The notes under the pieces: model-generated | The model's input: the letters and a program-made list of their open reading frames with translations, nothing else | The model's database searches: none | What the model was told of the DNA's origin: nothing | Position numbers and translations under genes: made by a program | In this document: positions 1,247-60,339 of the stretch, piece by piece | Layout: each line of letters starts with the position of its first letter | Numbering within the stretch: the stretch's first letter is position 1 | Virus record (IMG/VR): IMGVR_UViG_3300044645_002359 | Location: 1 to 64,000 of that record | Length of the DNA: 64,000 nucleotides | Direction: 5' to 3' (one strand)

Positions 1247-1319
1247 GGGAATGTCGTATAGTGGACTAATACCCTCGGCCGATTACCGAGATACACAGGT
1301 TCGAATCCTGTCATTCCTA
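1247..1319 (+). tRNA. tRNA with GAT anticodon (Ile?), atypical C33
   Basis: ctcgg-ccgatta-ccgag. Confidence 0.65.
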
Positions 1320-1358
1320 CTTTGCTTAGGCAAAACTCTCTGTTTTTCGCAGAAAAAC

Positions 1359-3040: not shown

Positions 3041-3135
3041 TTGTCTGAAAGTAAACTTAATTCAAGTGAGTTTACTTTTCAGCAAGCCCCTATAATAGGG
3101 ATGTAACGCGGGTGAGTGTTTCGCTCCGCGAACTC

Positions 3136-3183
3136 AGATGATTCAGCGATTGACTCCTTCGAACTGGAAAAACAATCATCTAG
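3136..3183 (+). ncRNA. Helix-CAGC(A/G)A module, type 1
   Basis: agatgatt-cagcga...aaaac-aatcatct. Confidence 0.65.
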
Positions 3184-3582: not shown

Positions 3583-3664
3583 GCGGGTATAGCTCAGCGG
3601 TAGAGCACTTGTCTTCCAAACAAGAGGCGAATAGTTCACGCAGGTTCGAATCCTGTTACCCGCT
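3583..3664 (+). tRNA. tRNA-Gly(TCC) with extended variable loop
   Basis: cttgt-cttccaa-acaag; 15-nt variable region. Confidence 0.85.
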
Positions 3665-4348: not shown

Positions 4349-4478
4349 TTTTTGCTATCGCAAAAACCCAAAGCCATGGGTAACTGATGGCACAAAGGGT
4401 GTGAGTCCCGAGGGGAAAGCAACTGCAATTGTAATACCCGGCCCTTCAAAGTAACTTGCAGGTTTCTTCATAGGGATT

Positions 4479-4548
4479 TGGACGTTAGCTCAACTGGAAG
4501 AGCGCCGCCCACCGGTGGAGGTTGCGGGTTCGAGTCCCGTGCGTTCAA
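4479..4548 (+). tRNA. tRNA-like gene with 4-nt anticodon loop
   Basis: ccgcc-cacc-ggtgg; D and T arms and acceptor intact. Confidence 0.7.
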
Positions 4549-4609
4549 TTTGCCCTCAGGTGAAAGTCTAGGGGTAATAATTACCGGGAGATCAAACCCT
4601 GGTAAAAAA

Positions 4610-4686: not shown

Positions 4687-4707
4687 TTGTTTTGCGATAG
4701 CAAAACT

Positions 4708-4761
4708 AAGATGGTTCAGCAATCTAAAAACTTTCTTTTTGGTAGAAAAACAACCATCTTG
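4708..4761 (+). ncRNA. Helix-CAGCAA module presenting a Gln(TTG)-like anticodon stem-loop
   Basis: aagatggtt-cagcaa...tttct-ttttggt-agaaa...aaccatctt. Confidence 0.75.
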
Positions 4762-4879
4762 TGTAACCTCACAGTTACAAGCTTCGGAATTGACTTAGAA
4801 AGTGGTGCCGTCACCACTCACAGTTTTAACTGCAGAGTTTAGTCAATCTCCTTGATCGTAGCGGGTAAACGGTCTTCAA

Positions 4880-5142: not shown

Positions 5143-5210
5143 CGCTCCGTAGTTTAGTGGCAGAACGTCCCCGCGACGGGGTTAATTCGGGTTCGAATCC
5201 CGACAGAGCA
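5143..5210 (+). tRNA. tRNA-like gene with 5-nt anticodon loop
   Basis: cccc-gcgac-gggg; T arm tcggg-ttcgaat-cccga. Confidence 0.6.
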
Positions 5211-5396
5211 ATTTGCCCACAAGTGACAAATCCTATTTCATATGAAAGTAGAAACACCGAAATTGGTGAGAGAGATTCTTCAAGATGCTGAGGCAAGGAA
5301 ACAACTGGCTGCTGCCATAGCTAATCCTTCTCTCACTGTCACACTTAAGGGTAAAACCTATACGCTGGAAAGCATTAAGTTACACACTTAGCACAA

Positions 5397-6724: not shown

Positions 6725-6796
6725 GGGAGATTAGCTCAGCGGTAGAGCGCCTGCCCTACAAGCAGGATGTCATCGGTTCAAGCCCGGTATCTCCCA
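6725..6796 (+). tRNA. tRNA-Val(TAC)
   Basis: cctgc-cctacaa-gcagg (C33). Confidence 0.85.
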
Positions 6797-10423: not shown

Positions 10424-11262
10424 ATGCAGAGTTCTTTTTCAGCTAAAGCTATTGAGACAGTTAACCTTCTCCTGGGTAGTTCAGGCACACTTGACTACAC
10501 ACGTTGTGTAAGACCGGATGGTACCGCCTATGGGACTTCAGGTTCCTGTCGCAAGGGTACGCAGCAAAATAAAGCTGAAATTCGGAAGCTAAAAGCCAAG
10601 ATAAAAGAAGCTGAGGGGGTTATAGAGTACCAGCTGAAAGCAGGCGACCCGGCATACGCAAGTCTCTGGGCCAAGCGATTAGAGGAACACAAAAGAAAAC
10701 TAACCGAACTTGAGGGCAATGAGCCGGTCAAGCCAACTACAAAATCAAACGCTCCAGTCTTAACTGGCGTTGAAAAAAGCGCCTTGGTTAACTATATGAC
10801 CGGGGGCTCCATGGAAACTGGGAATTTGCTGGATATAAACTGGAGGCTCAGGGGATTAGGTGAAGGGCTGATCTCATCTACCGAAAACGAACAAATCAAG
10901 AATCTGGACTCAGCCTTGAAGAAACTACCCGGTAATTCGTCTGGGCAGGAGTTTTATCGGGGTGTATCTTTGGAGCCTGAGCAAGCCAGGAATCTCTTAA
11001 CTTCACTGAAAAGTCAAGGGTCGTGGAAAGACCCAGGTTTTCTTCCTACTCGCGAGACAGAGAACAGGCAGAAGAGTTTGCAGGTCAAGGGGAAGTTTCC
11101 GTCATTTTCATTACGCGGTCCAAAAACTTACGAGATGCCGGTAAATACGCTCCCGAAGAATTTTCGGATCAGCAAGAATCAATCCTCCCCCGGAATACCC
11201 CTTTAAGGGTTACAAACATTAAAAAAGACGGCGAGCTAATTGTGGTCCATCTGGCTGATTGA
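10424..11262 (+). CDS. DFTRC-family protein with C-terminal VIP2/Alt-like ADP-ribosyltransferase; single-base frameshift at 11038-11041
   Basis: YRGV...GFSSYS...DQQESILP once 10424..11206 and 11023..11262 are joined. Confidence 0.75.
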
Positions 11263-24419: not shown

Positions 24420-24660
24420 GGTCTAAGGGCAAAGCCCTACCATACGGCTCAAAACTGGGTGTAGCTCGGGCAGACGTTGCGGTGGACAAGGGGGCAGTAC
24501 CCTTTAGCTCCACTTTCCCTTTACGGGGCTAATCTAGTTTCGACACCGTGAAAGTGTCACTTGAGTGAAAGCCGCTTGCATAAGCACAAAATAGACGCTA
24601 ACAAAATCGTCAAATTCGAGAGGACTGCCGTAGCCGTTTGAGCTATAGCATTCTGACTCA
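24420..24660 (+). ncRNA. ssrA: Circularly permuted (two-piece) tmRNA, tag (A)NKIVKFERTAVAV
   Basis: T arm and acceptor tagctcca end at 24512, upstream of 5' ggggctaatctagtttcgac at 24525; tag frame 24597-24641. Confidence 0.85.
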
Positions 24661-24664
24661 TTGC

Positions 24665-24683
24665 GGGGGCTTCGGCCCCCCTT
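24665..24683 (+). terminator. GC hairpin with TTCG loop after tmRNA
   Basis: gggggc-ttcg-gccccc-tt. Confidence 0.7.
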
Positions 24684-24701
24684 AAACCAATTAGAAACAA
24701 A

Positions 24702-25094
24702 ATGTTGCAAATTACCTACGAGTCAGAACTAGACTCTGACTACAGGAAAGAACTTGATTCTTGCACAAGCGTTCAAGATTTGAAAGCCTTGATTGACAAG
24801 TACAAGGCAGTCTCCCCCGACTTAAAGGATGTTGTAATTGAGAGCGATGCCGATTACAATGAGTTCAAGAAAGGCTTAGCCGTGGAACGAACTGGGCAAT
24901 ATGCTGGTGACGAATGGTGTGAAAGATTTGGCTCTTTGGCCCTTCCTGTCTACATGCTTTACGCTTCACTTTTAGCCGGAGAGTATGGGGCACCTTGGGG
25001 AGTTGCTTACTTTAGAATGTGCGCGGAAGGGGCTGTCCCAGGTGTAGACCCTGAGCTTGCGAAACAAGAAATTTTCTCATTTCTGCCCAGTTAA
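24702..25094 (+). CDS. Hypothetical protein
   Basis: ORF track. Confidence 0.7.
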   Translation: MLQITYESELDSDYRKELDSCTSVQDLKALIDKYKAVSPDLKDVVIESDADYNEFKKGLAVERTGQYAGDEWCERFGSLALPVYMLYASLLAGEYGAPWGVAYFRMCAEGAVPGVDPELAKQEIFSFLPS

Positions 25095-33439: not shown

Positions 33440-34429
33440 ATGATCGCCCTACCCAACGTCAAGGAAGAAACGGTTATCGAGCCGTTAGTCAAAGAACTGA
33501 TTCAGGTTACCGTTGAAACAGAAGGCGGTTTGGGTTACGTTCATAGGAAAACTTTTCAATTCAGTGCAGGAGAGACTCAAGTTCGCCTCAGTCCTTTGCC
33601 TACAGGAGTCAGGAAGATTCGAGTTAGGGCGGATATTGAGAGCAGCCAAACTTTGGTAGAACTTCTTCTGACTTTGGATGCTATTAACAATCTAGAGTAC
33701 CAAGGTCCTGTCGGATTAACCCTCCCATACCTTCCTTACAGCCGTCAAGACCGCGCCTGCGCACCTGGCGAGGCTTTTGCCCTTTCTGTTCTTGTAAACT
33801 GCCTCGTCCCGTATCTCGGTGCCGACGACACTATCACAACTTGGGATGTTCACAGCAGTGTGGCACGAACCCTTTTCGATAGTAAATTCCAGGGAGTATT
33901 CTATAATGTCTCCGCAGCGAGTCTCTTGCAGAATTTTGAGCTTGAAAAAGATGTGGTATTCAATCCCTCAACCATTGTCATTGCCCCAGATAAGGGTGCT
34001 GTAGACCGGGCCACAGAAGTTCAAAATGTCCTGGGACTAGAACGGACCGTGTACGCAACCAAAGTTCGCAATCCGGACGACGGCCAGATCCTAAGAACAG
34101 AAGTTCCCGAAGACGTGAATTACCGAGGCAAAAACCTTTTGATTGTAGACGACATTTGTGATGGTGGCCGCACTTTCATCGAACTTGCCAAGGTTTTGCG
34201 AGAATACGAGCCGTCACGTATTGACCTTTATGTGACACATGGGATCTTCTCAAAAGGTTTCAAAGTTTTTGAGGGCTTTATTGACAACATCTACGTAGCC
34301 AACCTGTTGATGGAACTCATTGAGCACCGCGATGGACGAAAGTCGTTCCCATCAGGTTCTGACCTCTGTGAAAATGTGGGATGTTATAGAGAATTTCCGA
34401 GCAACGTGACTTATCTCCGAAACATTTAA
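33440..34429 (+). CDS. prs: PRPP synthetase-like protein (NARP1 Adps-like)
   Basis: FSAGE...PYLPYSRQDR...DVHS...APDKGA...IVDDICDGGRTF. Confidence 0.9.
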   Translation: MIALPNVKEETVIEPLVKELIQVTVETEGGLGYVHRKTFQFSAGETQVRLSPLPTGVRKIRVRADIESSQTLVELLLTLDAINNLEYQGPVGLTLPYLPYSRQDRACAPGEAFALSVLVNCLVPYLGADDTITTWDVHSSVARTLFDSKFQGVFYNVSAASLLQNFELEKDVVFNPSTIVIAPDKGAVDRATEVQNVLGLERTVYATKVRNPDDGQILRTEVPEDVNYRGKNLLIVDDICDGGRTFIELAKVLREYEPSRIDLYVTHGIFSKGFKVFEGFIDNIYVANLLMELIEHRDGRKSFPSGSDLCENVGCYREFPSNVTYLRNI

Positions 34430-34467
34430 CCCTGCTCGACAACCCAAGTCAAACCTCTTAACAAACA

Positions 34468-35970
34468 ATGAAACTCTTCGCCCCTAACCTTACAGACTTC
34501 TACAAGACGGGTCACTACCGCCAGTACCCTGAAAACACGGAGTTCATCTACTCGAACATGACCGCACGGTCGGACCGTCTCGCCAAGATGCTCCCCGACT
34601 ACGACCACAAAGTAGTGGTAGCAGGTATTCTGGGCACAGCAGCTTGGTACCTTCGCGACCTTTGGAACGATACTTTCTTCAGTCAACCTAAAGACCGAGT
34701 ACTTGAAAAGTACCGCAGGCGAATGGACTCGGCTCTCGGACCTGGCGCCGTGAGCACAGCCCACCTGGCCGAACTTCACGACCTCGGTTACCTTCCAATC
34801 CGAGTAAAGGCTCTCCCAGAAGGCACCCGTGTCAATCTGCGCGTCCCCTTCCTCACGGTGGAGAACACACACCCCGACTTCTATTGGGTGACTAACTACA
34901 TTGAAACTGCCCTGTCGGCTGAAGTTTGGAAGCATGTCAACAATGCAACCATCGCCTACGAGTTTCGCCGCCTACTTGACCGATACGCAGATCTAACAGG
35001 GACTGACCGGTCTTTTGTTGACTTCCAGGCGCACGACTTTTCCTTCCGAGGAGTTAGTGGTATTCACGATGCTGCTGCCCACGGGATTGGACACCTGTTC
35101 TCCTTCAAGGGTACGGACAACATCCCGGCAATTGACTTCTTGGAAGATTACTACAACGTTGAAGGCGAATTTATCGCCGGTGGCGTCCCTGCTACCGAAC
35201 ACAGTGTTATGTGCACCGGGGGCCAAGATACTGAGATTGACACCTACAGGCGTCTGATTTCTGAAACTTACCCGACTGGTATTGTTAGCATTGTTAGCGA
35301 CACTTGGGACTACTGGAACGTTCTCACGAACATTGCTGCCCAACTGGAGGAGACGATCCTGAATCGCCAACCGGATGCCCTTGGCCTTGCCAAAGTTGTA
35401 TTCCGCCCTGATAGTGGAGACCCCGAGAGAATCCTTTGCGGCGACCCGGACGCTGAACCCGGCAGTCCAGCCTTCAAAGGCTCTCTGCAGCTCCTCTGGG
35501 ACCTCTTCGGAGGCACCGTAAACGAGCAGGGCTTCCGCGTCCTTAACCCTCGCGTGGGCCTCATCTACGGTGACTCGATCACCCTTCCTAGAGCTCTTTC
35601 CATTCTGGAGAACATGCACAGCAACGGATGGGCCAGCGGTAACGTTGTTTTCGGTGTGGGTTCGTACACTTACCAGTTCCACACTCGCGATACATTCGGC
35701 ATCGCTTTCAAGACGACTTGGACTCAAATCAACGGTCAACCTGTCGAAGTTATGAAAGATCCGATTACCGACCGTGGAACTAAGAAGTCGGCCAAAGGGT
35801 TGCTTCGTGTTGAAGAAGAGAATGGCGAGTACGTTCTCTACGAGCAACAAAGTCGAGATGAAGAGAGTCGAGGAGAACTGCGAACCGTATTTATGAATAG
35901 CCAGGTCTTCGAAAGACCCGACGAGAGTTTGACGAACATTCGCAGTCGTCTTGTCTCGCCAAATTCCTAA
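34468..35970 (+). CDS. nadV: Nicotinamide phosphoribosyltransferase-like protein (NARP1 Namat-like)
   Basis: TDFYKTGH...HDFSFRG...PATEHSVM...VSDTWD...RPDSGDP...KKSAKG. Confidence 0.92.
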   Translation: MKLFAPNLTDFYKTGHYRQYPENTEFIYSNMTARSDRLAKMLPDYDHKVVVAGILGTAAWYLRDLWNDTFFSQPKDRVLEKYRRRMDSALGPGAVSTAHLAELHDLGYLPIRVKALPEGTRVNLRVPFLTVENTHPDFYWVTNYIETALSAEVWKHVNNATIAYEFRRLLDRYADLTGTDRSFVDFQAHDFSFRGVSGIHDAAAHGIGHLFSFKGTDNIPAIDFLEDYYNVEGEFIAGGVPATEHSVMCTGGQDTEIDTYRRLISETYPTGIVSIVSDTWDYWNVLTNIAAQLEETILNRQPDALGLAKVVFRPDSGDPERILCGDPDAEPGSPAFKGSLQLLWDLFGGTVNEQGFRVLNPRVGLIYGDSITLPRALSILENMHSNGWASGNVVFGVGSYTYQFHTRDTFGIAFKTTWTQINGQPVEVMKDPITDRGTKKSAKGLLRVEEENGEYVLYEQQSRDEESRGELRTVFMNSQVFERPDESLTNIRSRLVSPNS

Positions 35971-41082: not shown

Positions 41083-42131
41083 TACTTGACACTTTCACTA
41101 AGCTCATCTAGACTCATGTCCCGAATGTCTCTCTCCCAGATGTATATTACCGTAAACCCGTATTTCTCCGCAACTCCCTTCTTCTCTATATCCCTCTCCC
41201 AAATTTCTTCCACAAGGGTACTACCCCCTCCCGGAAGGTGAATACTGTCCCCAAACGAATAGATTTCGGGGTTAGCGTGCCAATAGTCCCCCTGGACCTC
41301 TATTAGCACTTTGGTCCCCGTAATCAAAAAGTCAAATTGCCTTCTGGCAACAAATCGAGAGAACTGAAATTTCAGACCCGCAAGTTCTAAAGCTTGAGAC
41401 ACCTTTTCTTCAACCTTGTTCATTTTCGTAAAAAACTTACCACTCAAGAAGTCATCATTGACTTGCTTCCAGAATTTCCTTGTAAGCTCTCCTCTTCTTT
41501 CGGAGTACTCCTGCTTTCTTTCCTCGCCCCACCCCCTTCTCGTTTCCCTGAGTTTTTCTGCTATTGAACTCATCTTTTCCAAGGAAAAAGAAGCTCTAGT
41601 CAGAGAAATTGCCTCCGGGTTGGTAACCCTAAGCTTACCATAGCGCTCAAGATGAGTTTCGTTTATCTTTTCTTTGACATCTGAAAGTTGGAAAACATTG
41701 TCCACCCCGTACTTTGATCTAACTGTTTCATTTCTCTTGTGGTAAAATTCAGTTCCCTTACAGAGAACATTATTCACTCCGTACTTTTCTTGAGAAACTT
41801 TCACCATTTTACTTTTCTTTTGATTTGAACCATTAGCTTCTTTAATTTTTCTTACAGGTATCTCAAAGTAGTCCATTAGAAAAGATAGTCTCCTGCCCGG
41901 TAATCCAAAAAGCTCTTTGAAGTCCGGGAAGCTGAACCCCTTAATCAGGTACAAGTGCTTTAGTTTTCTGCCACTCTCTAGTTTCAGCGCCGGGTAGCTA
42001 AGCTTCAAGGTGTTAAACCTGTACTCCTTTTCCGATAAACCAGGCCCCTTAAGACAGGTTTTCAAATGAATCTTCCTTCCACACTCCTTAAGACAAACAA
42101 AGCAAACCAAACTCTTAACTAGAACCCCCAT
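41043..42131 (-). mobile_element. Free-standing Vsr/DUF559-like homing endonuclease, antisense, between the intein halves
   Basis: KYGVNNV/KYGVDNVFQ repeats; FDF...LIEVQGDYWHA...IYIWERDI. Confidence 0.85.
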
Positions 42132-43008
42132 GAAAATCTCCAAAATAGAAAAGATAGAAAGTGACTCCCACCTATATGATATACAAACTTTTACCCGTAA
42201 CTTCTACGCTGAGGGGGTATTGGTACACAATAGCTTAATCAAGCTCTTCAACTACAACGGGGACTGGATTGTTTCGACGTCCGGATCGGTGGCAGCAGCT
42301 TCGGAAGTTGGTTCCACTGGGCGTTCTTTTGAGGAACTGTTCTGGCTTGTCTTTGACGAAGTTGGTTATTCTCGGGAATGGCTCGATGAGGGTCTGTGCT
42401 ATATCTTCGAACTGTGCCACCGCGATAACCGCATCGTTGTGGATTATGCAGAGCCTCAGTTACCGCTGCTGGCTGTGCGCGACCGTTCCAACGATTTCGA
42501 AGAGCTTGAACTTGTTTCGTTCTGCAACCTGTTCGGGTTCAAAGCTGCCAAGTCGTATGACCTGGGGAGCATGGAAGGCTTGATGGCAGTCGTGAACGAT
42601 CGTGGCGCCGACCACGAAGGGTTTATCCTGTTTGACGGTGTTGGTCGTGCGAAAGCAAAGTCCGATGTGTACTGCCAAATGCACCGTGTTCGCGGAAACG
42701 GCGATCCGGACTTCTCCGAGCTTTTTCTGAACGACGATTTGGAAGAATTCCTACTGCACTTCCCTGAGTACCGTGAGGGCTTCGACGTTCACCTGCGTTC
42801 CATCGACATAATGGAAGTTGCTGTGGAAGAGATCATGGGGGTTTACAACCACTTGAATCAGAAGGACTTTGCTCAAGTTGTAATTGCTAAGGAGAGGGAA
42901 CTGTCGGGGGCTTGTTTTGCGATTCGCTCCGGTAAAGTTGGCTCCTTCGGTCAGTGGCTGGAAGGCTTGTCTCCGAAGAAGCTGGATGCCCTGCTGGGTA
43001 TCAACTGA
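42130..43008 (+). CDS. C-half of split intein (34 aa) plus RNA ligase 1 C-extein
   Basis: MKISKIEK...LYDIQ...NFYAEGVLVHN|SLIKLF..GDW.VSTSG...YIFEL...HEGFILFD...AKAKS. Confidence 0.9.
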   Translation: MKISKIEKIESDSHLYDIQTFTRNFYAEGVLVHNSLIKLFNYNGDWIVSTSGSVAAASEVGSTGRSFEELFWLVFDEVGYSREWLDEGLCYIFELCHRDNRIVVDYAEPQLPLLAVRDRSNDFEELELVSFCNLFGFKAAKSYDLGSMEGLMAVVNDRGADHEGFILFDGVGRAKAKSDVYCQMHRVRGNGDPDFSELFLNDDLEEFLLHFPEYREGFDVHLRSIDIMEVAVEEIMGVYNHLNQKDFAQVVIAKERELSGACFAIRSGKVGSFGQWLEGLSPKKLDALLGIN

Positions 43009-48780: not shown

Positions 48781-48815
48781 TATTGCATGAACATGACACG
48801 AGCCTAATCTACAAA

Positions 48816-49940
48816 ATGGCAAACATCGAACGCAAACTTGCATCTGTCCGCAAAGTAACGGACATTCGCCCCATCCCCGACGCTGACGCCATCGAATGCG
48901 CCATTGTAGGTGGTGGTTGGCCCGTGGTAGTGAAAAAGGGAGAATTTCAGGTTGGCGACCTCGCCATCTACTTCGAGATTGATTCCTGGATTCCTCACGA
49001 ACTTGCCCCATTCCTCTCCAAGGGGAAGAAACCAAGGGAGTATAATGGAGTGAAGGGGGAGAGGCTGAAAACTGTCAGGCTCCGTGGTCAAGTCTCCCAG
49101 GGTCTCCTGCTCCGCTTCTCGGACATCTCTCCAAGCTTCTACGTTGTCTCGCTAGCCGAACCTTACGGGGGGAGGGAATTTCTCCGAGTTGATCAGTGCG
49201 TGTGGGAGGAAGGTGAGGACTTCACTCTAGAGTTCGGAATTCAGAAATGGGAAGCTCCTGTCCCAGCTTGCTTGGCTGGTCAAGTTCGCGGGAACTTTCC
49301 TAGCTTCCTCGTGAAGACGGACCAGGAACGTTGTCAGAATGTTGTGGAGGAAATCTTTGAGCGCCATAAGGGTGAAACCTACGAAGTTACTATCAAACTT
49401 GATGGGTCTTCCTGCACGGTCTACGTCAAGGACGGGGAAGTTGGGGTGTGCAGCCGTAACCTTGACCTCAAGGAAACCGAAGGCAATAGTTTCTGGAAGG
49501 CTGCTAGGGATCAGGGCATTATCGATGCTATGCTTGCATACAATGGGAAGACTGGTCACAGTATTGCCTTGCAGTCGGAAACCCTTGGAGAAGGCATCCA
49601 GGGCAACCAGGAAGGAATCAAGGGACAACGCCTATTCCTGTTTGACATCTTCGATATCGACAGCCAAACTTACATGAAGCCAGGGGCCAGAATGAACCTC
49701 TTGGACAAGTACCTAGTTCCATTAGGCGCTGATTTAACCCATACCCCTGTCCTACACCCCGCAATGTGTGTAACTGATAGTTCCGCCAACCTTGATGAGC
49801 TACTAGCGTACGCCGATGGCCCGTCCATGAACCCCAAAGTCAAACGCGAAGGCTTAGTATTCAAGTCCAATGACTCTGAGTTTTCCTTCAAGGCCATTAG
49901 TAATGAATGGCTCTTATCCAAGGGAAAGAAGGGTGGCTGA
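48816..49940 (+). CDS. RNA ligase, Rnl2/DRB0094 family
   Basis: RKLASVRKV...YFEIDS...SQGL...KTDQER...KLDGSS...EGLVFK...FKAISNEWL. Confidence 0.92.
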   Translation: MANIERKLASVRKVTDIRPIPDADAIECAIVGGGWPVVVKKGEFQVGDLAIYFEIDSWIPHELAPFLSKGKKPREYNGVKGERLKTVRLRGQVSQGLLLRFSDISPSFYVVSLAEPYGGREFLRVDQCVWEEGEDFTLEFGIQKWEAPVPACLAGQVRGNFPSFLVKTDQERCQNVVEEIFERHKGETYEVTIKLDGSSCTVYVKDGEVGVCSRNLDLKETEGNSFWKAARDQGIIDAMLAYNGKTGHSIALQSETLGEGIQGNQEGIKGQRLFLFDIFDIDSQTYMKPGARMNLLDKYLVPLGADLTHTPVLHPAMCVTDSSANLDELLAYADGPSMNPKVKREGLVFKSNDSEFSFKAISNEWLLSKGKKGG

Positions 49941-53973: not shown

Positions 53974-54792
53974 ATGTCTGTCACTAAAGTTGCAATCGGC
54001 TCTGGCGCCATTCTCCTTTCTCTGGTTCTAGCCGCAGGCCAATTTACCACAATTAGCACGGGTGAAAATGGTCTTTACATTGGCTTCGATGGCCAAGTCA
54101 AAAACGAAGTGCTGACCCCAGGCATCAAGTACGACGGGTTGGGCTCCATCAAGGTGTTTAACACTCGTAAGATCACTGTCACAGCGAACGACCTTCGTCC
54201 CAAGACTAAAGATAACACCATCATGAAAGAGATGGACGTCACGGTTACTTACAGCATTAATCCTAACTCCCTTTACGAGTTTTTCACCAACTACGACCTT
54301 ACCAACCACGGTATTGCCGAAAACGGTCAGCTTCAACTGATGTCAAGTTACATCTCTCGTCTTATTACATCCGCTGTTAACCAGTCGGTAGACGAATTCC
54401 CTGCTTTGGCTGTTAACAGTAGTCTTGAGCAAATTCAAGACACAATTAAGGCCAACCTTTCGGAAGCTTTACAGAAAAATGGTCTTGAAGGTAAGATCAC
54501 CGTGGATTCAATCATAGTTGGCAAGGCAGACCTTCCTGACGACCTGGTTGCCTCGGTTAACCGTGTGGTTGCCGCTCAGTCGGGTTTGAAAGAACAACAA
54601 GTTAGGACAGAAACTGCCCAATTGAAGGCGGAAGAGAACAAAGCTCTGGCTTCTACCGTTACCGCACAATCGTTGGAATACCAGCGAAATGAAATCCTGA
54701 AGGCTGCCTTTGCCAACGGATCCATTCAGAAGATGGTTATCATCAACGGTGCCAAGATGGACTTTCTGCCCGGTGGCTTGACCGATAAGTAA
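53974..54792 (+). CDS. SPFH/band 7 (prohibitin-like) membrane protein
   Basis: N-terminal TM segment, SPFH fold, C-terminal coiled coil. Confidence 0.8.
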   Translation: MSVTKVAIGSGAILLSLVLAAGQFTTISTGENGLYIGFDGQVKNEVLTPGIKYDGLGSIKVFNTRKITVTANDLRPKTKDNTIMKEMDVTVTYSINPNSLYEFFTNYDLTNHGIAENGQLQLMSSYISRLITSAVNQSVDEFPALAVNSSLEQIQDTIKANLSEALQKNGLEGKITVDSIIVGKADLPDDLVASVNRVVAAQSGLKEQQVRTETAQLKAEENKALASTVTAQSLEYQRNEILKAAFANGSIQKMVIINGAKMDFLPGGLTDK

Positions 54793-56477: not shown

Positions 56478-56567
56478 TTGCCGAGAGTTTACCGTCTACC
56501 CCTGGCCCTATGTTAGGGCTGTCGGTGTCCACGCCGCCATTTCCCTAGGGTAACCCCGGGAACAAAG

Positions 56568-56593
56568 TTGATACAGCCATCACTTGTATCCAA
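56568..56593 (+). promoter_or_regulatory. CAGCCA hairpin in the leader of the TROVE-like gene
   Basis: ttgataca-gccatcact-tgtatc(c)aa. Confidence 0.55.
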
Positions 56594-56624
56594 AACACAA
56601 AAACAATCAACTTGAGAGAAGAAA

Positions 56625-58118
56625 ATGACAACCTTTTTGAACGCACTCGAAAACGAATTCAATACTACGACCACAGCCAACGGCGCAAAAGCCTATAAGT
56701 CCACAGGTTCCAAGAACCTGGACCTTTTCGGGAAGATTGCAGCCTGCCGCAACGACGTTAGCGAAGCAACTCGCCTATTCAACCTTGCTTATGCTGAAGA
56801 CCCTGAGACCGCAACCAGAATCCTGTTCTGGGCACGTGACATTCGCGGTGGCCAGGGTGAGCGTAAGATCTTCCGAGAAGTTTTCAAGGAGCTGGTTCGC
56901 AATGATGCTACAATCGGCGCGAAACTCATTAGTTTGATCCCGCAGTATGGACGCTGGGATGATGTGGTAGCCCTTGAAGGCACCCTAGTTTGGAATGTTG
57001 CACTCGAGGCAATCAAGGCACAGCTGAACGCTGACTTGAACACCGAAGTTGGAAACTCCGTGTCATTGCTTGCGAAATGGCTCCCTTCCATTAACGCCTC
57101 TAGCAAGGAGTCTAAGAGGATTGGCCGCAAGATTGCCGAGGCAATGGGTTGGAATGAGCGTCAATATCGCAAGGCTTTGACTGCTCTTAGGACACAAATC
57201 AAAATTGTCGAACAGGCAATGTGTGCCCGTGAGTGGGATGCCATTGATTATAGCAAGTTGCCTTCTCGTGCAGGCTTCATGTATCGGAAAGCTTTCGCAA
57301 ATCGTGATGGCGACCGTTACCAGTCCTACCTGGATGCAGTTAAAAAAGGTGAAGCAAAGATCAATGCCGGTACTTTGTATCCGTATGACATCGTTGAGAA
57401 GTGTCTCTACAACCAAGAATCCAATGATACTCTAGAAGTAATGTGGAAAGCCCTGCCGAACTTCATGGAGGGCAAGGAATTGAATGGGCTTGTTGTTGCC
57501 GATGTTAGCCGTTCTATGTCAGGCCGTCCAATGGCAGTATCCATCTCTCTGGCGATGTATATCGCAGAGCGTAATACCGGCATCTGGAAGGACAAGTTCC
57601 TAACATTCTCAGGGAATCCTTCTCTACAGACTGTGACTGGCAGTAGCCTTTCAAACAAGGTTCGCAACCTTAGCCGAGCAGATTGGGGCGGTAACACTGA
57701 TATTCAGAAGACGTTTGACCTTATTCTGGATACTGCAGTTCGGAACAACATTCCAGAGTCAGACATGCCCCGCAAACTGATTATTGTCTCAGACATGCAG
57801 TTTGATAACTGTGTTATCATGGGAGGTAATTACTCCGGTCGTATGAGTTATGGCGGAGCCCGAGTCACCAACTACGAAGCAATCCGCATCAAGTACGCTC
57901 AAGCTGGCTACAGCTTGCCCGAAGTTATCTTCTGGAATGTCGATTCCTCAGATAACGTCCCGATGAAGGCACATGATTCCGGTACCGCTCTCGTTAGCGG
58001 TTGCTCTCCGTCAATCCTGACCGCAGTTCTTACCAGAAACGCAATCACCCCATTGTCCCTAATGAGAGATGCTGTTTATACTGAAAGGTATGACGCTGTG
58101 GGTGCGGTCTTTAACTGA
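56625..58118 (+). CDS. TROVE/Ro60-related DUF2828 + vWA protein
   Basis: T.NGA.AY.STG...LDLF...RDIRGG.GER...YGRWDD...AKWLPS...ADVSRSM...SDMQFD...FWNV...SG.SP. Confidence 0.85.
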   Translation: MTTFLNALENEFNTTTTANGAKAYKSTGSKNLDLFGKIAACRNDVSEATRLFNLAYAEDPETATRILFWARDIRGGQGERKIFREVFKELVRNDATIGAKLISLIPQYGRWDDVVALEGTLVWNVALEAIKAQLNADLNTEVGNSVSLLAKWLPSINASSKESKRIGRKIAEAMGWNERQYRKALTALRTQIKIVEQAMCAREWDAIDYSKLPSRAGFMYRKAFANRDGDRYQSYLDAVKKGEAKINAGTLYPYDIVEKCLYNQESNDTLEVMWKALPNFMEGKELNGLVVADVSRSMSGRPMAVSISLAMYIAERNTGIWKDKFLTFSGNPSLQTVTGSSLSNKVRNLSRADWGGNTDIQKTFDLILDTAVRNNIPESDMPRKLIIVSDMQFDNCVIMGGNYSGRMSYGGARVTNYEAIRIKYAQAGYSLPEVIFWNVDSSDNVPMKAHDSGTALVSGCSPSILTAVLTRNAITPLSLMRDAVYTERYDAVGAVFN

Positions 58119-58305
58119 TGGAAAGGACCCTAGTAACTACGTTAATGTCAGCCCAGGGTCTTCTCCTTGGGTTGAAGTTAACAGGGCAAATAGCCTGGTC
58201 GTGGCTGTGGGTGTTTAGTCCTATTTTAGTTGTAAGCTGTGGGTTAGGGTTACTTATCCTCCTATTGATCCTAGGGTTGATGGGCGGTAAGTAAGGCAGA
58301 CCCGT

Positions 58306-58359
58306 AAGATGGTTCAGCAATCAAACCTTTCTTTGTAACAGAAAAAACCAACCATCTTG
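58306..58359 (+). ncRNA. Helix-CAGCAA module presenting a Tyr(GTA)-like anticodon stem-loop
   Basis: aagatggtt-cagcaa...tttct-ttgtaac-agaaa...aaccatctt. Confidence 0.75.
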
Positions 58360-58403
58360 TTTAAATAAAGTCAACTTCCCTGGTAGTTCACCGGGGCAAC
58401 AAT

Positions 58404-58520
58404 GGGGAATGGTGCAATGGCAGCACACGTAATTAACGGTTACCTTGGATAAGGTACAGACAGCAATTACAAAAATTCCATTCCACGGACGTGACGGAGG
58501 TTCGATTCCTTCTTCCCCAT
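58404..58520 (+). ncRNA. tRNA body (Gly TCC-like) with CAGCAA hairpin inserted in the anticodon stem
   Basis: D and T arms; gtacctt-ggat-aaggtac-aga-cagcaa; cc-attccac-gg. Confidence 0.7.
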
Positions 58521-58719
58521 TTTCGAAAATCAACTCAAGCAATCAACAATGAAGTCATCTCATCTTTACACTTTGATCGGTGTTGTAGCACTGTGGTTTG
58601 TATTGACCTTGACACTAATTCTCAAGGAAAACTATCAAGGTGCTATCGGAACCGGATTGGCCCTTTTCTTTTCCTCGGTTGGTACGATAGGTGTTGTTGC
58701 CCATTTTGAAGGGAACAGG

Positions 58720-58782
58720 CGGTAAACCGCCCCATGTGGTTCGGTTTGCACCCTTGTTTTCGCACCGCGAAAACGCTATGAT
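58720..58782 (+). promoter_or_regulatory. Class I repeated promoter
   Basis: cggtaaaccg; TTGTTT-17-TATGAT; ATG 58789. Confidence 0.85.
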
Positions 58783-58788
58783 TATAAC

Positions 58789-59232
58789 ATGAACCAAGAG
58801 ACCTACTTCCCTTGCTCTCGCCAGATCGAGATCCTCGATCAGCACGAGAACGCCAACGAGATTCCTCCGTACGTTAATTATCTGGTGCGGTTTGAGAACC
58901 CCTACGGTGGAGAAAGTGTCGGAGTGGTAATTGAGCCCAACTCCGAAGGCGTCGAAGAAGTTTACACTAACCAGAAATTTCCGGTAGCTTCCATGCTTCC
59001 TGGCCAATCGGAAAATGACGAGCTTCTGCTCAACCTTTTCCGCACCTGGGTGTTGACTCCGCCGATGTTTACACAAGTCACTGTTCGTCAACAGACGGAC
59101 AAGTTCTACACCTTGAGTTTTCACAATCAGCACTGGAATTTCCATGCCCGCTCTCGGAACCTCTCGTACATCAAAGGGAAGATTCGGAACCTAGCAAAGT
59201 CCCGTGATGTGAAGGTCACCTGGGAGGTTTGA
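58789..59232 (+). CDS. Hypothetical protein (leaderless)
   Basis: ATG 6 nt after -10. Confidence 0.7.
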   Translation: MNQETYFPCSRQIEILDQHENANEIPPYVNYLVRFENPYGGESVGVVIEPNSEGVEEVYTNQKFPVASMLPGQSENDELLLNLFRTWVLTPPMFTQVTVRQQTDKFYTLSFHNQHWNFHARSRNLSYIKGKIRNLAKSRDVKVTWEV

Positions 59233-59272
59233 CTCCAAGTTTACCTCCCTCCTTGAGGCCTATGCTGTTTTT

Positions 59273-59363
59273 GAGACGAGTCAGCGTTAACTAAAGGATA
59301 ATGCGAGACAGTTAAAAACTTTTTCAGCTAGGTGGTTCAAATCCACTGTCAACACTCATCTTG
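59273..59363 (+). ncRNA. Y-RNA-like module: terminal helix, CAGCG and internal T arm
   Basis: gagacgagt-cagcg...gtgg-ttcaaat-ccac...actcatctt; starts at predicted +1 of the TATGCT promoter. Confidence 0.65.
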
Positions 59364-59377
59364 TTCACAAATAAAAC

Positions 59378-59501
59378 CGAAGAGTAGACAAGTGGTTAGG
59401 CAGCGGTAATGCAAAAAAGATTATCTAGTTTAGGTGATTCAGCAATACCCTAATACGCTAAAAGGAACCGCCATACGCAAGTTCGAATCTTGCCTCTTCG
59501 A
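59378..59501 (+). ncRNA. tRNA body with CAGCAA hairpin inside the anticodon loop
   Basis: cgaagag/ctcttcg; gcggt..accgc encloses gattatcta-gtt-taggtgatt-cagcaa. Confidence 0.7.
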
Positions 59502-59521
59502 TTGTTTTTCTTTGAAAACGT

Positions 59522-59570
59522 AGATAGTTCAGCAATTCACCCTAACTCAATAAGGAAAACAACTATCTTG
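59522..59570 (+). ncRNA. Helix-CAGCAA module, type 1
   Basis: agatagtt-cagcaa...cct-aactcaata-agg...aactatct. Confidence 0.7.
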
Positions 59571-59609
59571 CTGAATCTAGTTTCAACAAACTATTTGCGA
59601 AGCAAATAA

Positions 59610-59727
59610 GGGACCGTAGCTCAACTGGTAGAGCGCTAAATAAAAGTTATCTTGTACAAGATACGTCAGCAATTAAAAAATACCTCGTTTAAAGGAGTGG
59701 TTGCAGGTTCGAGTCCTGCCGGTCCCA
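59610..59727 (+). ncRNA. tRNA body (Lys TTT-like) with CAGCAA hairpin between the D and anticodon arms
   Basis: gggaccg/cggtccc; tatcttg-tac-aagata-cgt-cagcaa; cct-cgtttaa-agg. Confidence 0.7.
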
Positions 59728-59970
59728 TTTACCCCAAGTCTAGCCATGAAAATTTCACGGTTGTTACCCTGCTGGCCTGCACAGTGCTAACTCTCTCGCC
59801 AACGTGGGCAAAATACCAGAGTCTAATCACTGGCGCAAACCCGGAGGAAGTTCAAGAAAATGCCTTCAAGAAAAGTATGAGCTATCCGGTGGGCTCTCTC
59901 AAGTGTAGCCAGCGTTGTTCTCAGTGGTGGCATCACGACTGACTTAGCATCAAGAGTAAAAAAGTTTAAC

Positions 59971-60339
59971 ATGACAAATAGTACAACCCCGTTTCACTTG
60001 ACCCAAAGTCACCTGAAACTGCTGAGGAGAATGCACGTAGGTTGGAGCGTCTGTGAGTTTGGTGCTCCCGAGATAGACCCAAAGAGACCATACGGCAACA
60101 GTTGGGTGCTTGGCGACATACACGAGATTTTGACAGGGGAAGACATAGACGAACTAACTGAATCTCAGAAGGAGGAATACAGGCAGTTACACGAAGAAAC
60201 TCAAACAGCCCTCCAGATTATCCTTTCCATGGGCAAGTTTGAGGAAGGCTTGTACATACGGACTAACCCGTACTCTTCCACCTGGGTACCGTACCCACTC
60301 GCGGGCAGAATCGCGGAAAAATCACAAAACGCTACTTAG
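59971..60339 (+). CDS. Conserved phage hypothetical protein
   Basis: GAPEIDPKRPYGNS....DIHEIL. Confidence 0.75.
   Translation: MTNSTTPFHLTQSHLKLLRRMHVGWSVCEFGAPEIDPKRPYGNSWVLGDIHEILTGEDIDELTESQKEEYRQLHEETQTALQIILSMGKFEEGLYIRTNPYSSTWVPYPLAGRIAEKSQNAT

What the first reader, a model, noticed from the sequence alone, without database searches (positions are those of the whole stretch)
4708..4761. Isolated anticodon stem-loops displayed on CAGCAA scaffolds (Gln-TTG here, Tyr-GTA at 58306)
The 4708 and 58306 elements are nearly identical scaffolds (aagatggtt-cagcaa...tttct-[7 nt]-agaaa...aaccatctt). They differ mainly in the 7-nt loop: tt-TTG-gt versus tt-GTA-ac, both shaped like real anticodon loops (U33, purine 37). 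Elements 3136 and 59522 carry weaker loops (TCG-like; CAA or TCA-like). A swappable anticodon loop on a constant scaffold suggests decoys for host anticodon nucleases, or codon-specific regulators. No Tyr tRNA was found in this window.
Basis: partly seen in the sequence, partly recalled or inferred. Interest (0 to 1): 0.82.

Follow-up and report, generated by a model that had tools for sequence, protein, structure and literature searches.

The report
Phage Y-RNA-like RNAs displaying anticodon loops
The "anticodon loops on CAGCAA scaffolds" are real, and they belong to an apparently undescribed family of small RNAs that always sits beside a phage gene for a Ro60-like RNA-binding protein, so they are best read as phage Y RNAs, some of which mimic an anticodon arm or are built into whole tRNAs.

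Summary
The window holds five stand-alone elements: 3136-3181, 4708-4760, 56565-56613, 58306-58358 and 59522-59568. Each has an outer 8-9 bp stem that covaries, an unpaired CAGCRA motif and an apical hairpin. The same module, capped by a loop, is inserted into the anticodon stem of three tRNA or tRNA-like genes (58403-58520, 59378-59501, 59610-59727).

All lie on the gene strand. Six of the eight surround ORF 56625-58118, a DUF2828/vWA protein whose model matches only Ro60 structures.

Stem-CAGCRA elements flank homologues of this gene in cyanophage, Escherichia, Mycobacterium, Listeria, Bacillus and Campylobacter phages. Some of these carry the T-arm, closed acceptor and D-arm layout of YrlA Y RNAs.

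Best explanation: these are Y-RNA-like partners of a phage Ro60-like protein. The stem plus CAGCRA would be the protein handle and the apical part the effector module.

In the 4708/58306 subfamily the effector module is a 5-bp, 7-nt-loop mimic of an anticodon arm. U32 and U33 are fixed, position 37 is a purine, and each paralogue has its own triplet.

The decoy idea is neither excluded nor shown. Binding, expression and splicing are untested. Novelty: a new variant of a known kind.

The parts
4708..4760 (+). E2, the stand-alone element in the finding: outer stem 4708-4716/4752-4760, CAGCAA 4717-4722, anticodon-arm-like hairpin 4732-4748 (loop TTTTGGT 4737-4743)
   Evidence: Sequence. Model R1 scores it 64.2 bits, E 2.5e-11. 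The outer stem is predicted by folding. The loop is conserved in 7 scaffold variants.
58306..58358 (+). E3, stand-alone element 188 nt after the stop of the Ro60-like gene: CAGCAA 58315-58320, hairpin TTTCT-TTGTAAC-AGAAA 58328-58344
   Evidence: Sequence. R1 scores it 61.3 bits. The minimum-energy fold gives a 5-bp stem with a 7-nt loop. Orthologues carry GTA in four scaffold variants plus one TTGTAGC variant (G at 37), and GCA in two.
3136..3181 (+). E1, stand-alone element in the tRNA array: CAGCGA 3144-3149; the apical loop is not anticodon-like
   Evidence: Sequence. R1 scores it 60 bits. An orthologue lies in L129.
59522..59568 (+). E4, stand-alone element between tRNA-like C and tRNA B: CAGCAA 59530-59535, interior CCCTAACTCAATAAGG
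   Evidence: Sequence. R1 scores it 52.4 bits. Its interior is homologous to the 3' linker of tRNA-like C.
56565..56613 (+). E0, a divergent element (CAGCCA 56574-56579) ending 11 nt before the ATG of the Ro60-like gene; possible leader or autoregulatory site
   Evidence: R1 scores it 26.6 bits, E 0.002. Sequence. Counterparts sit at the same position in L027, L033, L107, L114 and Synechococcus phage B3.
56625..58118 (+). Gene for the Ro60-like protein (DUF2828 + DUF7788/vWA, 497 aa), the proposed protein partner
   Evidence: Pfam assignment. The DxSxS MIDAS motif is invariant. The AlphaFold2 model's top 8 Foldseek PDB hits are all Ro60/TROVE proteins. Homologues are annotated 'Ro-like RNA binding protein' in Mycobacterium phages.
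58403..58520 (+). tRNA A, carrying a 47-nt capped CAGCAA module (58431-58477) between nt 29 and 30 of the anticodon stem; without it the sequence reads as tRNA-Gly(UCC)
   Evidence: Rfam tRNA 41.5 bits. Model R2 scores the module 42.2 bits. ARAGORN calls a tRNA after removal in silico.
59378..59501 (+). tRNA-like C: acceptor, D-arm and T-arm, with the capped CAGCAA module (59413-59452) in place of the anticodon loop; no anticodon could be derived
   Evidence: Sequence. R2 scores the module 39.1 bits. The orthologue L001:9378-9505 is called tRNA by Rfam at 47.8 bits. The window copy has a D-stem mismatch.
59610..59727 (+). tRNA B, carrying a 45-nt capped CAGCAA module (59638-59682) between nt 28 and 29; without it the sequence reads as tRNA-Lys(UUU) with loop CGUUUAA (G33)
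   Evidence: Rfam tRNA 50.1 bits. R2 scores the module 46.9 bits. ARAGORN result. Orthologues have the canonical CUUUUAA loop and a compensatory 28:42 change.
3050..3090 (+). Weak capped hairpin followed by CAGCAA, not inside a tRNA
   Evidence: R2 scores it 21.3 bits. It was part of the training alignment, so the score is not independent evidence.

Best explanation
The elements are Y-RNA-like small RNAs, the RNA partners of the phage-encoded Ro60-like protein at 56625-58118.

**Proposed parts.** The outer stem, the unpaired CAGCRA(UUA) strand and the A-rich strand opposite it form the protein-binding handle. This handle occupies the place of the 5'/3' stem and GNCGAA motif of bacterial YrlA/YrlB. 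The apical part is the variable effector module.

**Three forms of the effector module.**
- In E2 and E3 it is a bare mimic of an anticodon stem-loop.
- In other phages it is a T-arm, closed acceptor and D-arm domain, as in YrlA.
- In tRNAs A, B and C the handle is capped and grafted onto the 5' strand of the anticodon stem of a complete tRNA.

**Likely biogenesis (inferred).** The RNAs are transcribed within tRNA operons. They would be released by the RNase P and 3'-end cleavages that mature the neighbouring tRNAs.

**Likely function (inferred).** Y RNAs tether Ro60 to other proteins. By analogy, the handle would bring the Ro60-like protein to whatever recognises the displayed anticodon arm or tRNA. 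The most plausible targets are host tRNA-targeting nucleases, or tRNA repair and turnover enzymes. That would make the system part of the phage's defence of its translation apparatus.

**Shown:** the structure, the strand specificity, the gene linkage across distant phages, the Ro60 fold, and the anticodon-loop rules.

**Inferred:** binding, processing and the cellular target.
For: **1. The structure is real.**
- Outer stem: 97.5% paired, four of nine pairs compensatory, 0 of 500 shuffles as good.
- Capped form: 87% paired, three pairs compensatory.
- G-U pairs are present and reverse-strand scores are far lower. This points to an RNA on the + strand.

**2. Linkage to the gene.**
- In the window, six of eight modules lie within 1.6 kb of the gene.
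- Loci fetched only by a DNA pattern, and holding true elements, also hold a homologue of the gene: L021, L027, L033, L083, L100, L107, L114, L120, L122.
- Stem-CAGCRA elements lie next to the gene, on the same strand, in:
  - Synechococcus phage B3
  - E. coli Felixounavirus pinkbiff
  - Mycobacterium phage Silverleaf
  - Listeria LP-125, Bacillus Nate and Campylobacter F357

**3. The protein is Ro60-like.**
- The top 8 PDB fold matches are all Ro60/TROVE, full length, E 2.7e-7 to 2.8e-3.
- The MIDAS motif is invariant.

**4. Continuity with YrlA.**
- In L018:2679-2795 a CAGCAA stem encloses a region matching Rfam YrlA positions 29-81.
- The same layout appears in Silverleaf, pinkbiff and Nate.

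**5. A Ro60-like protein of a Felixounavirus counters a defence system.**
- Bas63 gp130 counters the 'ppl' system.
- Its authors guessed that nearby 'tRNA genes' are Y RNAs (bioRxiv 10.1101/2024.10.10.617714).
- I inferred that gp130 belongs to the DUF2828 family from its genus and gene position; I did not test this.

**6. Anticodon-arm mimicry.**
Against: - No expression, end-mapping or binding data exist for any of these RNAs.
- The motif is CAGCRA, not the GNCGAA/CGAA of known Y RNAs. No element reaches the Rfam YrlA threshold.
- The protein has no Pfam TROVE hit and no PDB sequence hit.
- The structure model is of moderate confidence (pLDDT 74.6). TM-scores to Ro60 are only 0.32-0.37.
- E1 and E2 lie about 52-53 kb from the gene in window coordinates.
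- The apical hairpins are thermodynamically weak. The minimum-energy fold of E2 prefers a different interior helix. Natural variants do break that alternative helix.
- I chose the 11 sequences used for the hairpin covariation test by eye.
Confidence: 0.72

Rival explanations
1. One reading: the elements are free-standing anticodon stem-loop decoys that soak up host anticodon nucleases, or codon-specific regulators. The CAGCAA scaffold is only a stabilising frame and the Ro60-like protein is irrelevant.
For: - All 18 variants of the TTTCT subfamily have 7-nt loops, U32-U33 and a purine at 37.
- Each genome carries 2-3 different triplets.
- Position 37 follows tRNA rules in embedded copies: G37 with UGG, A37 with UGU.
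- The phage's own tRNAs show many unusual anticodon loops. This pattern has been linked to escape from tRNA-targeting defences (PMC10264068).
Against: - The scaffold is conserved in elements with no anticodon-like loop: E1, E4, E0, and the YrlA-like forms.
- The scaffold tracks the Ro60-like gene across phage families. It is therefore more than a frame.
- No nuclease target is known for most of the displayed triplets.
- The decoy function can equally be the output of the Y-RNA model, so this rival differs only in denying a role for the protein.
Confidence: 0.13
2. The CAGCAA module is a new small tRNA intron, or an RNA-processing signal. It is cut out of tRNAs A and B and the ends are rejoined by phage RNA ligases. 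The stand-alone elements are relics or processing sites.
For: - Removing 39-49 nt at nt 28/29 or 29/30 turns 13 of 13 tested genes from five phage lineages into standard tRNAs.
- The restored stems are perfect 5-bp stems, and 28:42 changes are compensatory.
- The window encodes two RNA ligase-like proteins.
- Listeria phage LP-125 has an RtcB-like ligase nearby.
Against: - There is no group I intron signal.
- By my reading of the junctions there is no bulge-helix-bulge motif.
- No splicing endonuclease was found among the 20 ORFs scanned.
- In stand-alone and YrlA-like forms the module is the terminal stem, where excision has no meaning.
- tRNA-like C yields no anticodon arm after removal.
- Some insertion-bearing tRNAs duplicate intact ones: Gly-UCC in the window, Pro-UGG in L027.
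Confidence: 0.1
3. The elements act at the DNA level: a miniature inverted-repeat mobile element, a recombination site, or a promoter or terminator.
For: They are inverted repeats present in several copies, including inside genes.
Against: - All copies have one orientation, that of the genes.
- Reverse-strand scores are about 50 bits lower.
- G-U pairs would be A-C mismatches on the other strand.
- No T-run follows the stems, and promoter and terminator scans are at background.
- Stems covary between phages instead of spreading as identical copies.
Confidence: 0.03

Closest known systems
Bacterial and phage Y RNAs YrlA and YrlB, the partners of Ro60/Rsr (Chen et al. 2014, PMC4201824; Rfam RF02553)
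   Same: - They are encoded within a few kb of a Ro60-type gene, on the same strand.
- The 5' and 3' ends form a stem.
- A short conserved unpaired motif follows the 5' strand.
- The apical part is a tRNA-like domain (YrlA) or a small hairpin (YrlB).
- They sit in genomes that are rich in tRNA and RNA-repair genes.
   Different: - The motif is CAGCRA(UUA), not GNCGAAN0-1G.
- The protein partner is the DUF2828 family, which has no TROVE sequence match.
- No element reaches the Rfam threshold.
- E2 and E3 display an anticodon arm, the one part of a tRNA that YrlA lacks.
- In tRNAs A, B and C the topology is permuted: the handle is capped and the ends lie in the acceptor stem.
Yrl1 and Yrl2 of Thermus phage phiLo with phiRo60 (PMC12135203; PDB 9KOP, 9L5Y)
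   Same: - A phage-encoded Ro60 with two or more stem-bulge-stem RNAs next to its gene.
- phiRo60 is the best structural match of the window protein.
   Different: - The phiLo RNAs carry the CGAA motif.
- They were shown to bind the protein and host PNPase. Nothing has been shown here.
Bas63 gp130, a Ro60-like protein of an E. coli Felixounavirus that counters the 'ppl' defence system (bioRxiv 10.1101/2024.10.10.617714)
   Same: - The gene lies directly upstream of a tRNA array.
- A phage of the same genus (pinkbiff) has a DUF2828 homologue followed by four stem-CAGCAA elements between its tRNAs.
   Different: - That study did not identify the RNAs.
- I did not test whether gp130 itself belongs to the DUF2828 family.
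Intron-containing tRNA genes (group I introns in bacteria and phages; protein-spliced introns in archaea)
   Same: An insertion in the anticodon arm whose removal restores a standard tRNA.
   Different: - The insertion is only 39-49 nt.
- It lies in the stem at 28/29 or 29/30, not in the loop at 37/38.
- It has neither a group I core nor a bulge-helix-bulge motif.
- The same module exists free-standing.

Membership tests
Y RNA (YrlA/YrlB type) | Encoded close to, and on the same strand as, a Ro60-type gene | tested here: met
   E0, E3, E4 and tRNAs A, B and C lie within 1.6 kb of 56625-58118. The same holds in 6 annotated phages from different families and 9 metagenomic loci. E1 and E2 lie in the distant tRNA array.
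Y RNA (YrlA/YrlB type) | Stem formed by the 5' and 3' ends | tested here: met
   9-bp stem, 97.5% paired, four compensatory pairs.
Y RNA (YrlA/YrlB type) | Conserved GNCGAAN0-1G (CGAA) motif near the 5' end | tested here: not met
   The conserved motif in the equivalent place is CAGCAA, CAGCGA or CAGCCA. It is analogous in position but different in sequence.
Y RNA (YrlA/YrlB type) | tRNA-like domain with T-arm, closed acceptor stem and D-arm (YrlA only) | tested here: not met
   Absent from E0-E4. Present in relatives that share the CAGCAA handle: L018 (27.5 bits to RF02553, threshold 69), Silverleaf, pinkbiff and Nate.
Y RNA (YrlA/YrlB type) | Physical binding to the Ro60 protein | not testable with these tools
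   Needs immunoprecipitation or gel-shift assays.
Ro60/TROVE proteins (for the partner gene) | HEAT-repeat ring followed by a vWA domain with a MIDAS motif | tested here: inconclusive
   - The top 8 fold matches are all Ro60, aligned over the full length, with probability 1.0.
- DxSxS is invariant.
- TM-scores are only 0.32-0.37.
- There is no Pfam TROVE hit and no PDB sequence hit.
tRNA anticodon stem-loop (for the E2 and E3 hairpins) | 5-bp stem, 7-nt loop, U33, purine at 37 | tested here: met
   Met in 18 of 18 variants of the subfamily. The stem covaries. Not met by E0, E1 or E4.
tRNA (for E2 and E3 as a whole) | Acceptor stem, D-arm and T-arm | tested here: not met
   Neither ARAGORN nor Rfam calls them as tRNAs. 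They are only 53 nt long.
Group I intron (for the insertions in tRNAs A and B) | Catalytic core recognised by RF00028 | tested here: not met
   No hit in the window at the gathering threshold, nor in 57900-60300 at E up to 10. The insertion is only 45-47 nt.
Archaeal-type tRNA intron | Bulge-helix-bulge motif at the two junctions, and a splicing endonuclease gene | tested here: not met
   By eye, the junctions (CGU|AAU and AUU|CC in A) cannot form two 3-nt bulges around a 4-bp helix. No endonuclease family was found among the 20 ORFs scanned. Not every ORF was scanned.

The most novel reading that the evidence does not exclude
The phage runs a modular ribonucleoprotein. One Ro60-like protein is loaded, through a common CAGCRA handle, with a set of interchangeable anticodon arms, either free-standing or still attached to whole tRNAs. 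It uses them as baits, decoys or sensors against host anticodon-specific nucleases. In a second version of this reading, the 40-50 nt handle is a new protein-dependent tRNA intron of bacterial viruses, placed at nt 28-30.
Probability: 0.2. Interest if true: 0.9.

Novelty: new variant of a known kind. Interest (0 to 1): 0.7.

Why it matters
Homologues of the Ro60-like gene occur in 702 deposited phage genomes. These include well-studied Escherichia, Salmonella, Listeria, Staphylococcus, Mycobacterium and Bacillus phages. No RNA partner was named for this protein family in any paper I could find, although my searches were few.

A single short signature, a stem followed by CAGCRA, now marks candidate partners in every lineage I sampled. 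This makes several things directly testable in E. coli and Synechococcus phages:
- the function of the protein, one member of which counters a bacterial defence system;
- why Y RNAs imitate tRNA, a long-standing puzzle;
- whether phages protect or monitor their anticodon loops with dedicated RNPs.

The tRNA-embedded handles also explain 110-120 nt 'pseudo-tRNA' annotations such as tRNA-Pseudo-GCA in Synechococcus phage B3.

Tried and rejected
- **Known RNA families.** Rfam gave only tRNA and tmRNA hits, at gathering thresholds over the whole window and at E up to 10 on 57900-60300. No ribozyme, YrlA or intron was found. By eye I also saw no hammerhead, twister, pistol, hatchet or HDV-like core.
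- **Promoters and terminators.** Scans were at background level.
- **PDB sequence search with the protein.** No hit. The fold search was needed.
- **Literature search for DUF2828.** Only irrelevant plant and animal papers.
- **Prior descriptions.** Searches for tRNA-embedded Y modules or small phage tRNA introns found nothing.
- **ARAGORN with its intron option on the unspliced genes.** It gave inconsistent anticodons, because it assumes a loop intron.
- **Anticodon arm for tRNA-like C.** I could not derive one under any junction.
- **First viral scan.** Longer patterns fixed this.
- **Hypervariable triplets.** The support is weak: tRNA A has three orthologues with three anticodons on one body. 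All 3 triplet columns vary against 8 of 114 others, hypergeometric p about 6e-4 by my arithmetic. However, n = 3, and the loop of E2 is conserved.

Full report
**1. The observation**

The window is the first 64 kb of a 201-kb viral contig (IMGVR_UViG_3300044645_002359). It is a distant relative of Synechococcus phages B3 and B23. It carries 35 tRNA genes and a permuted tmRNA.

Each has three parts:
- an outer stem of 8-9 bp: AAGATGGTT/AACCATCTT in E2 and E3, AGATGATT/AATCATCT in E1, AGATAGTT/AACTATCT in E4;
- an unpaired CAGCAA or CAGCGA directly after the 5' strand;
- an apical hairpin followed by an A-rich strand.

I aligned 31 such elements from the window and related contigs and built a covariance model from them.
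- The outer stem is 97.5% paired. Four of its nine pairs change on both sides, and none of 500 shuffles does as well.
- Run over the whole window without filters, the model finds E1-E4 at 52-64 bits.
- It also finds a fifth, divergent copy (E0, CAGCCA) at 56563-56615.
- The reverse strand scores at most 12 bits.
- 73 unrelated loci served as controls. They gave one hit, at E = 0.74.

**2. The same module sits inside tRNA genes**

Rfam calls two 118-nt tRNAs, at 58403-58520 and 59610-59727, that ARAGORN misses. Each carries a 45-47 nt insertion with the same stem sequence and CAGCAA. Here the stem is closed by a tetraloop and the open end joins the tRNA. It is a circular permutation of the free-standing form.

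A third gene (59378-59501) has an acceptor stem, a D-arm (with one mismatched pair in the window copy) and a T-arm, and holds the module where the anticodon loop should be.

A second model for the capped form finds exactly these three in the window, plus a weak hairpin at 3046-3092. Its stem also covaries.

I removed the insertion in silico from 13 genes of five phage lineages. The cut was always between nt 28/29 or 29/30 of the anticodon stem.
- ARAGORN then called a standard tRNA in every case.
- The restored stems are perfect 5-bp stems with 7-nt loops.
- Between orthologues, 28:42 changes from U-A to G-C.
- Without its insertion, tRNA A reads as Gly(UCC) and tRNA B as Lys(UUU).

**3. The link to a Ro60-like gene**

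Six of the eight modules surround ORF 56625-58118. E0 ends 11 nt before its ATG and E3 starts 188 nt after its stop.
- The protein carries DUF2828 and a vWA-type domain. Its DxSxS MIDAS motif is invariant.
- It has no TROVE or PDB match by sequence.
- Its AlphaFold2 model (pLDDT 74.6) finds only Ro60 proteins as its eight best PDB matches:
  - Thermus phage phiLo Ro60
  - Deinococcus Rsr
  - Xenopus Ro
  - human Ro60
- These matches span the full length, with E-values of 2.7e-7 to 2.8e-3. TM-scores are modest, at 0.32-0.37.
- Homologues occur in 702 phage records and are annotated 'Ro-like RNA binding protein' in Mycobacterium phages.

**4. The association holds across phage families**

- Loci fetched only through a 15-nt DNA pattern, and containing true elements, also contain the gene.
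- In distant metagenomic relatives (36-41% protein identity), stems of unrelated sequence are followed by AYA-CAGCAA and cluster around the gene.
- The same arrangement is seen in six annotated phages from different families:
  - Synechococcus phage B3
  - E. coli phage pinkbiff
  - Mycobacterium phage Silverleaf
  - Listeria phage LP-125
  - Bacillus phage Nate
  - Campylobacter phage F357
- In B3 the elements are unannotated, and the insertion-bearing tRNA is labelled 'tRNA-Pseudo-GCA'.

**5. Continuity with YrlA**

In several of these phages the CAGCAA stem encloses a T-arm, a closed acceptor stem and a D-arm. One such RNA (L018:2679-2795) matches positions 29-81 of the Rfam YrlA model at 27.5 bits, below the threshold of 69.

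This is the architecture of YrlA, the tRNA-like Y RNA bound by bacterial Ro60. There, a short motif (GNCGAAN0-1G) near the 5' end is thought to be the protein site, and genes lie within 4 kb on the same strand (PMC4201824). Phage phiLo Ro60 binds two neighbouring stem-bulge-stem RNAs and recruits host PNPase (PMC12135203).

I therefore read stem plus CAGCRA as the handle for the DUF2828-type Ro60-like protein, and the apical part as the effector module.

**6. The anticodon-like loops**

Viral and metagenome scans gave 18 distinct variants of the TTTCT/AGAAA subfamily.
- All loops are 7 nt, start with TT and have a purine at position 6.
- The triplets are:
  - TTG in 7 scaffold variants
  - GTA in 4, plus one with G37
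  - GCA in 2
  - GCT in 2
  - GTT in 1
  - TCA in 1
- The search pattern fixed the stem but left the loop free.
- Sister lineages keep the hairpin with other stems, for example TATGT-TTTGGGT-ACATA against TTTCT-TTTGGGT-AGAAA. On 11 sequences chosen by eye the stem is 96% paired, with three compensatory pairs.

Within a lineage the loop is conserved while the linkers drift. Each paralogue therefore has a specific triplet, not a freely swapped one.

E0, E1 and E4 have no such loop. The minimum-energy fold of E2 prefers another interior helix, but natural variants break that helix.

In embedded copies position 37 follows tRNA rules: G37 with UGG, A37 with UGU, on the same tRNA body. The three orthologues of tRNA A carry UCC, UAC and CAU on one body. 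This is suggestive, but n = 3.

**7. Mechanism**

*Shown:*
- an RNA-level structure on the gene strand;
- tight linkage to a Ro60-fold protein across phage families;
- homology of the handle among free, YrlA-like and tRNA-embedded forms;
- anticodon-arm geometry in one subfamily.

*Inferred:*
- The RNAs are released from tRNA operon transcripts by the enzymes that trim the flanking tRNAs. In L027 the spacing to neighbouring tRNAs is 2-6 nt.
- The Ro60-like protein binds the handle.
- The displayed anticodon arm or tRNA directs the RNP to an anticodon-recognising partner.

*Context for a role in the tRNA conflict between phage and host:*
- a Ro60-like protein of an E. coli Felixounavirus counters the 'ppl' defence;
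- many tRNAs in this window have unusual position-33 bases (PMC10264068);
- RNA ligase genes are present.

A decoy function is compatible with this model. It has not been demonstrated.

**8. Rivals**

- **Small spliced intron.** It is supported by the clean restoration of tRNAs. It lacks any known splicing signal or enzyme. It also cannot explain the free and YrlA-like forms.
- **DNA-level repeat, promoter or terminator.** It is contradicted by strand specificity, G-U pairs, covariation and the absence of T-runs.

**9. Novelty**

Y RNAs next to phage Ro60 genes are known. I found no description, in Rfam or in the searchable literature, of any of the following:
- the CAGCRA handle;
- its link to the large DUF2828 family;
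- the bare anticodon-arm effector modules;
- the handle grafted into the anticodon stem of complete tRNAs.

I class the finding as a new variant of a known kind.

Noticed in passing
window 24423-24732: A phage-encoded permuted tmRNA (Rfam tmRNA_permuted 73 bits; tag peptide ANKIVKFERTAVAV). A related contig, L027, has a cyanobacterial-type tmRNA, which points to a cyanobacterial host.
   Followed up: partly
window 1247-1320, 6725-6796, 5143-5211, 2165-2237, 4478-4549, 363-433: Several phage tRNAs have non-canonical anticodon loops. Ile-GAT and Val-TAC have C33, one gene has G33, and two are called with 4-nt or 2-nt anticodons. This resembles the loop changes proposed to evade tRNA-targeting defences.
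   Followed up: partly
window 3583-3664: tRNA-Gly(UCC) carries a 12-nt insert in the variable region. It duplicates the anticodon of insertion-bearing tRNA A.
   Followed up: no
window 4690-4706: A small hairpin, GTTTTGC-GATA-GCAAAAC, lies between tRNA-Phe and E2. It is conserved at the same place in relatives with altered loop and stem (L095, L129, L131). It may be a processing signal.
   Followed up: no
window 4762-4879: The spacer after E2 contains further hairpins and a long-range stem (GGAATTGACT ... AGTCAATCTCC). It may be another structured RNA in the tRNA array.
   Followed up: no
window about 59272-59362: A degenerate relative of the T-arm-bearing form: GAGACGAGT-CAGCGT ... GGTGGTTCAAATCCACT ... 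ACTCATCTTG. It has two stem mismatches and is not found by the covariance model.
   Followed up: partly
window 53974-54792: An SPFH/Band-7 gene lies upstream of the Ro60-like gene. A band-7-like gene lies in the same relative position in Mycobacterium phage Silverleaf, so the linkage may be conserved.
   Followed up: no
window 48783-49940 and 42130-43008: An Rnl2-type RNA ligase (PHA02142 OB-fold plus RNA_ligase domain), and an Rnl1-like fragment whose N-terminus matches an intein splicing domain. The second may be an intein-interrupted ligase gene.
   Followed up: no
window 33440-35970 and 10424-11206: NAD salvage genes (a PRPP synthetase-like gene and a NAPRTase-family gene) and a weak match to ADP-ribosyltransferase.
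   Followed up: no
L155 5866-5975 (Synechococcus phage B3, MN695334.1 221705-221814): The GenBank feature 'tRNA-Pseudo-GCA' (110 nt) contains a capped handle with a variant motif, CUGCAA (model R2, 33.3 bits). It is probably not a pseudogene. Five free-standing elements around gp345 are unannotated.
   Followed up: partly
L021 843-1040: A group I intron (Rfam 53.6 bits) in a related phage contig, near its tRNA and Y-like cluster.
   Followed up: no
L200 5355-6521 (Listeria phage LP-125): An RtcB-like 'tRNA-splicing ligase' gene lies 1.3 kb downstream of the DUF2828 gene. Three stem-CAGCAA elements lie just upstream of that gene. The arrangement echoes the bacterial rsr-yrlBA-rtcBA operon.
   Followed up: no
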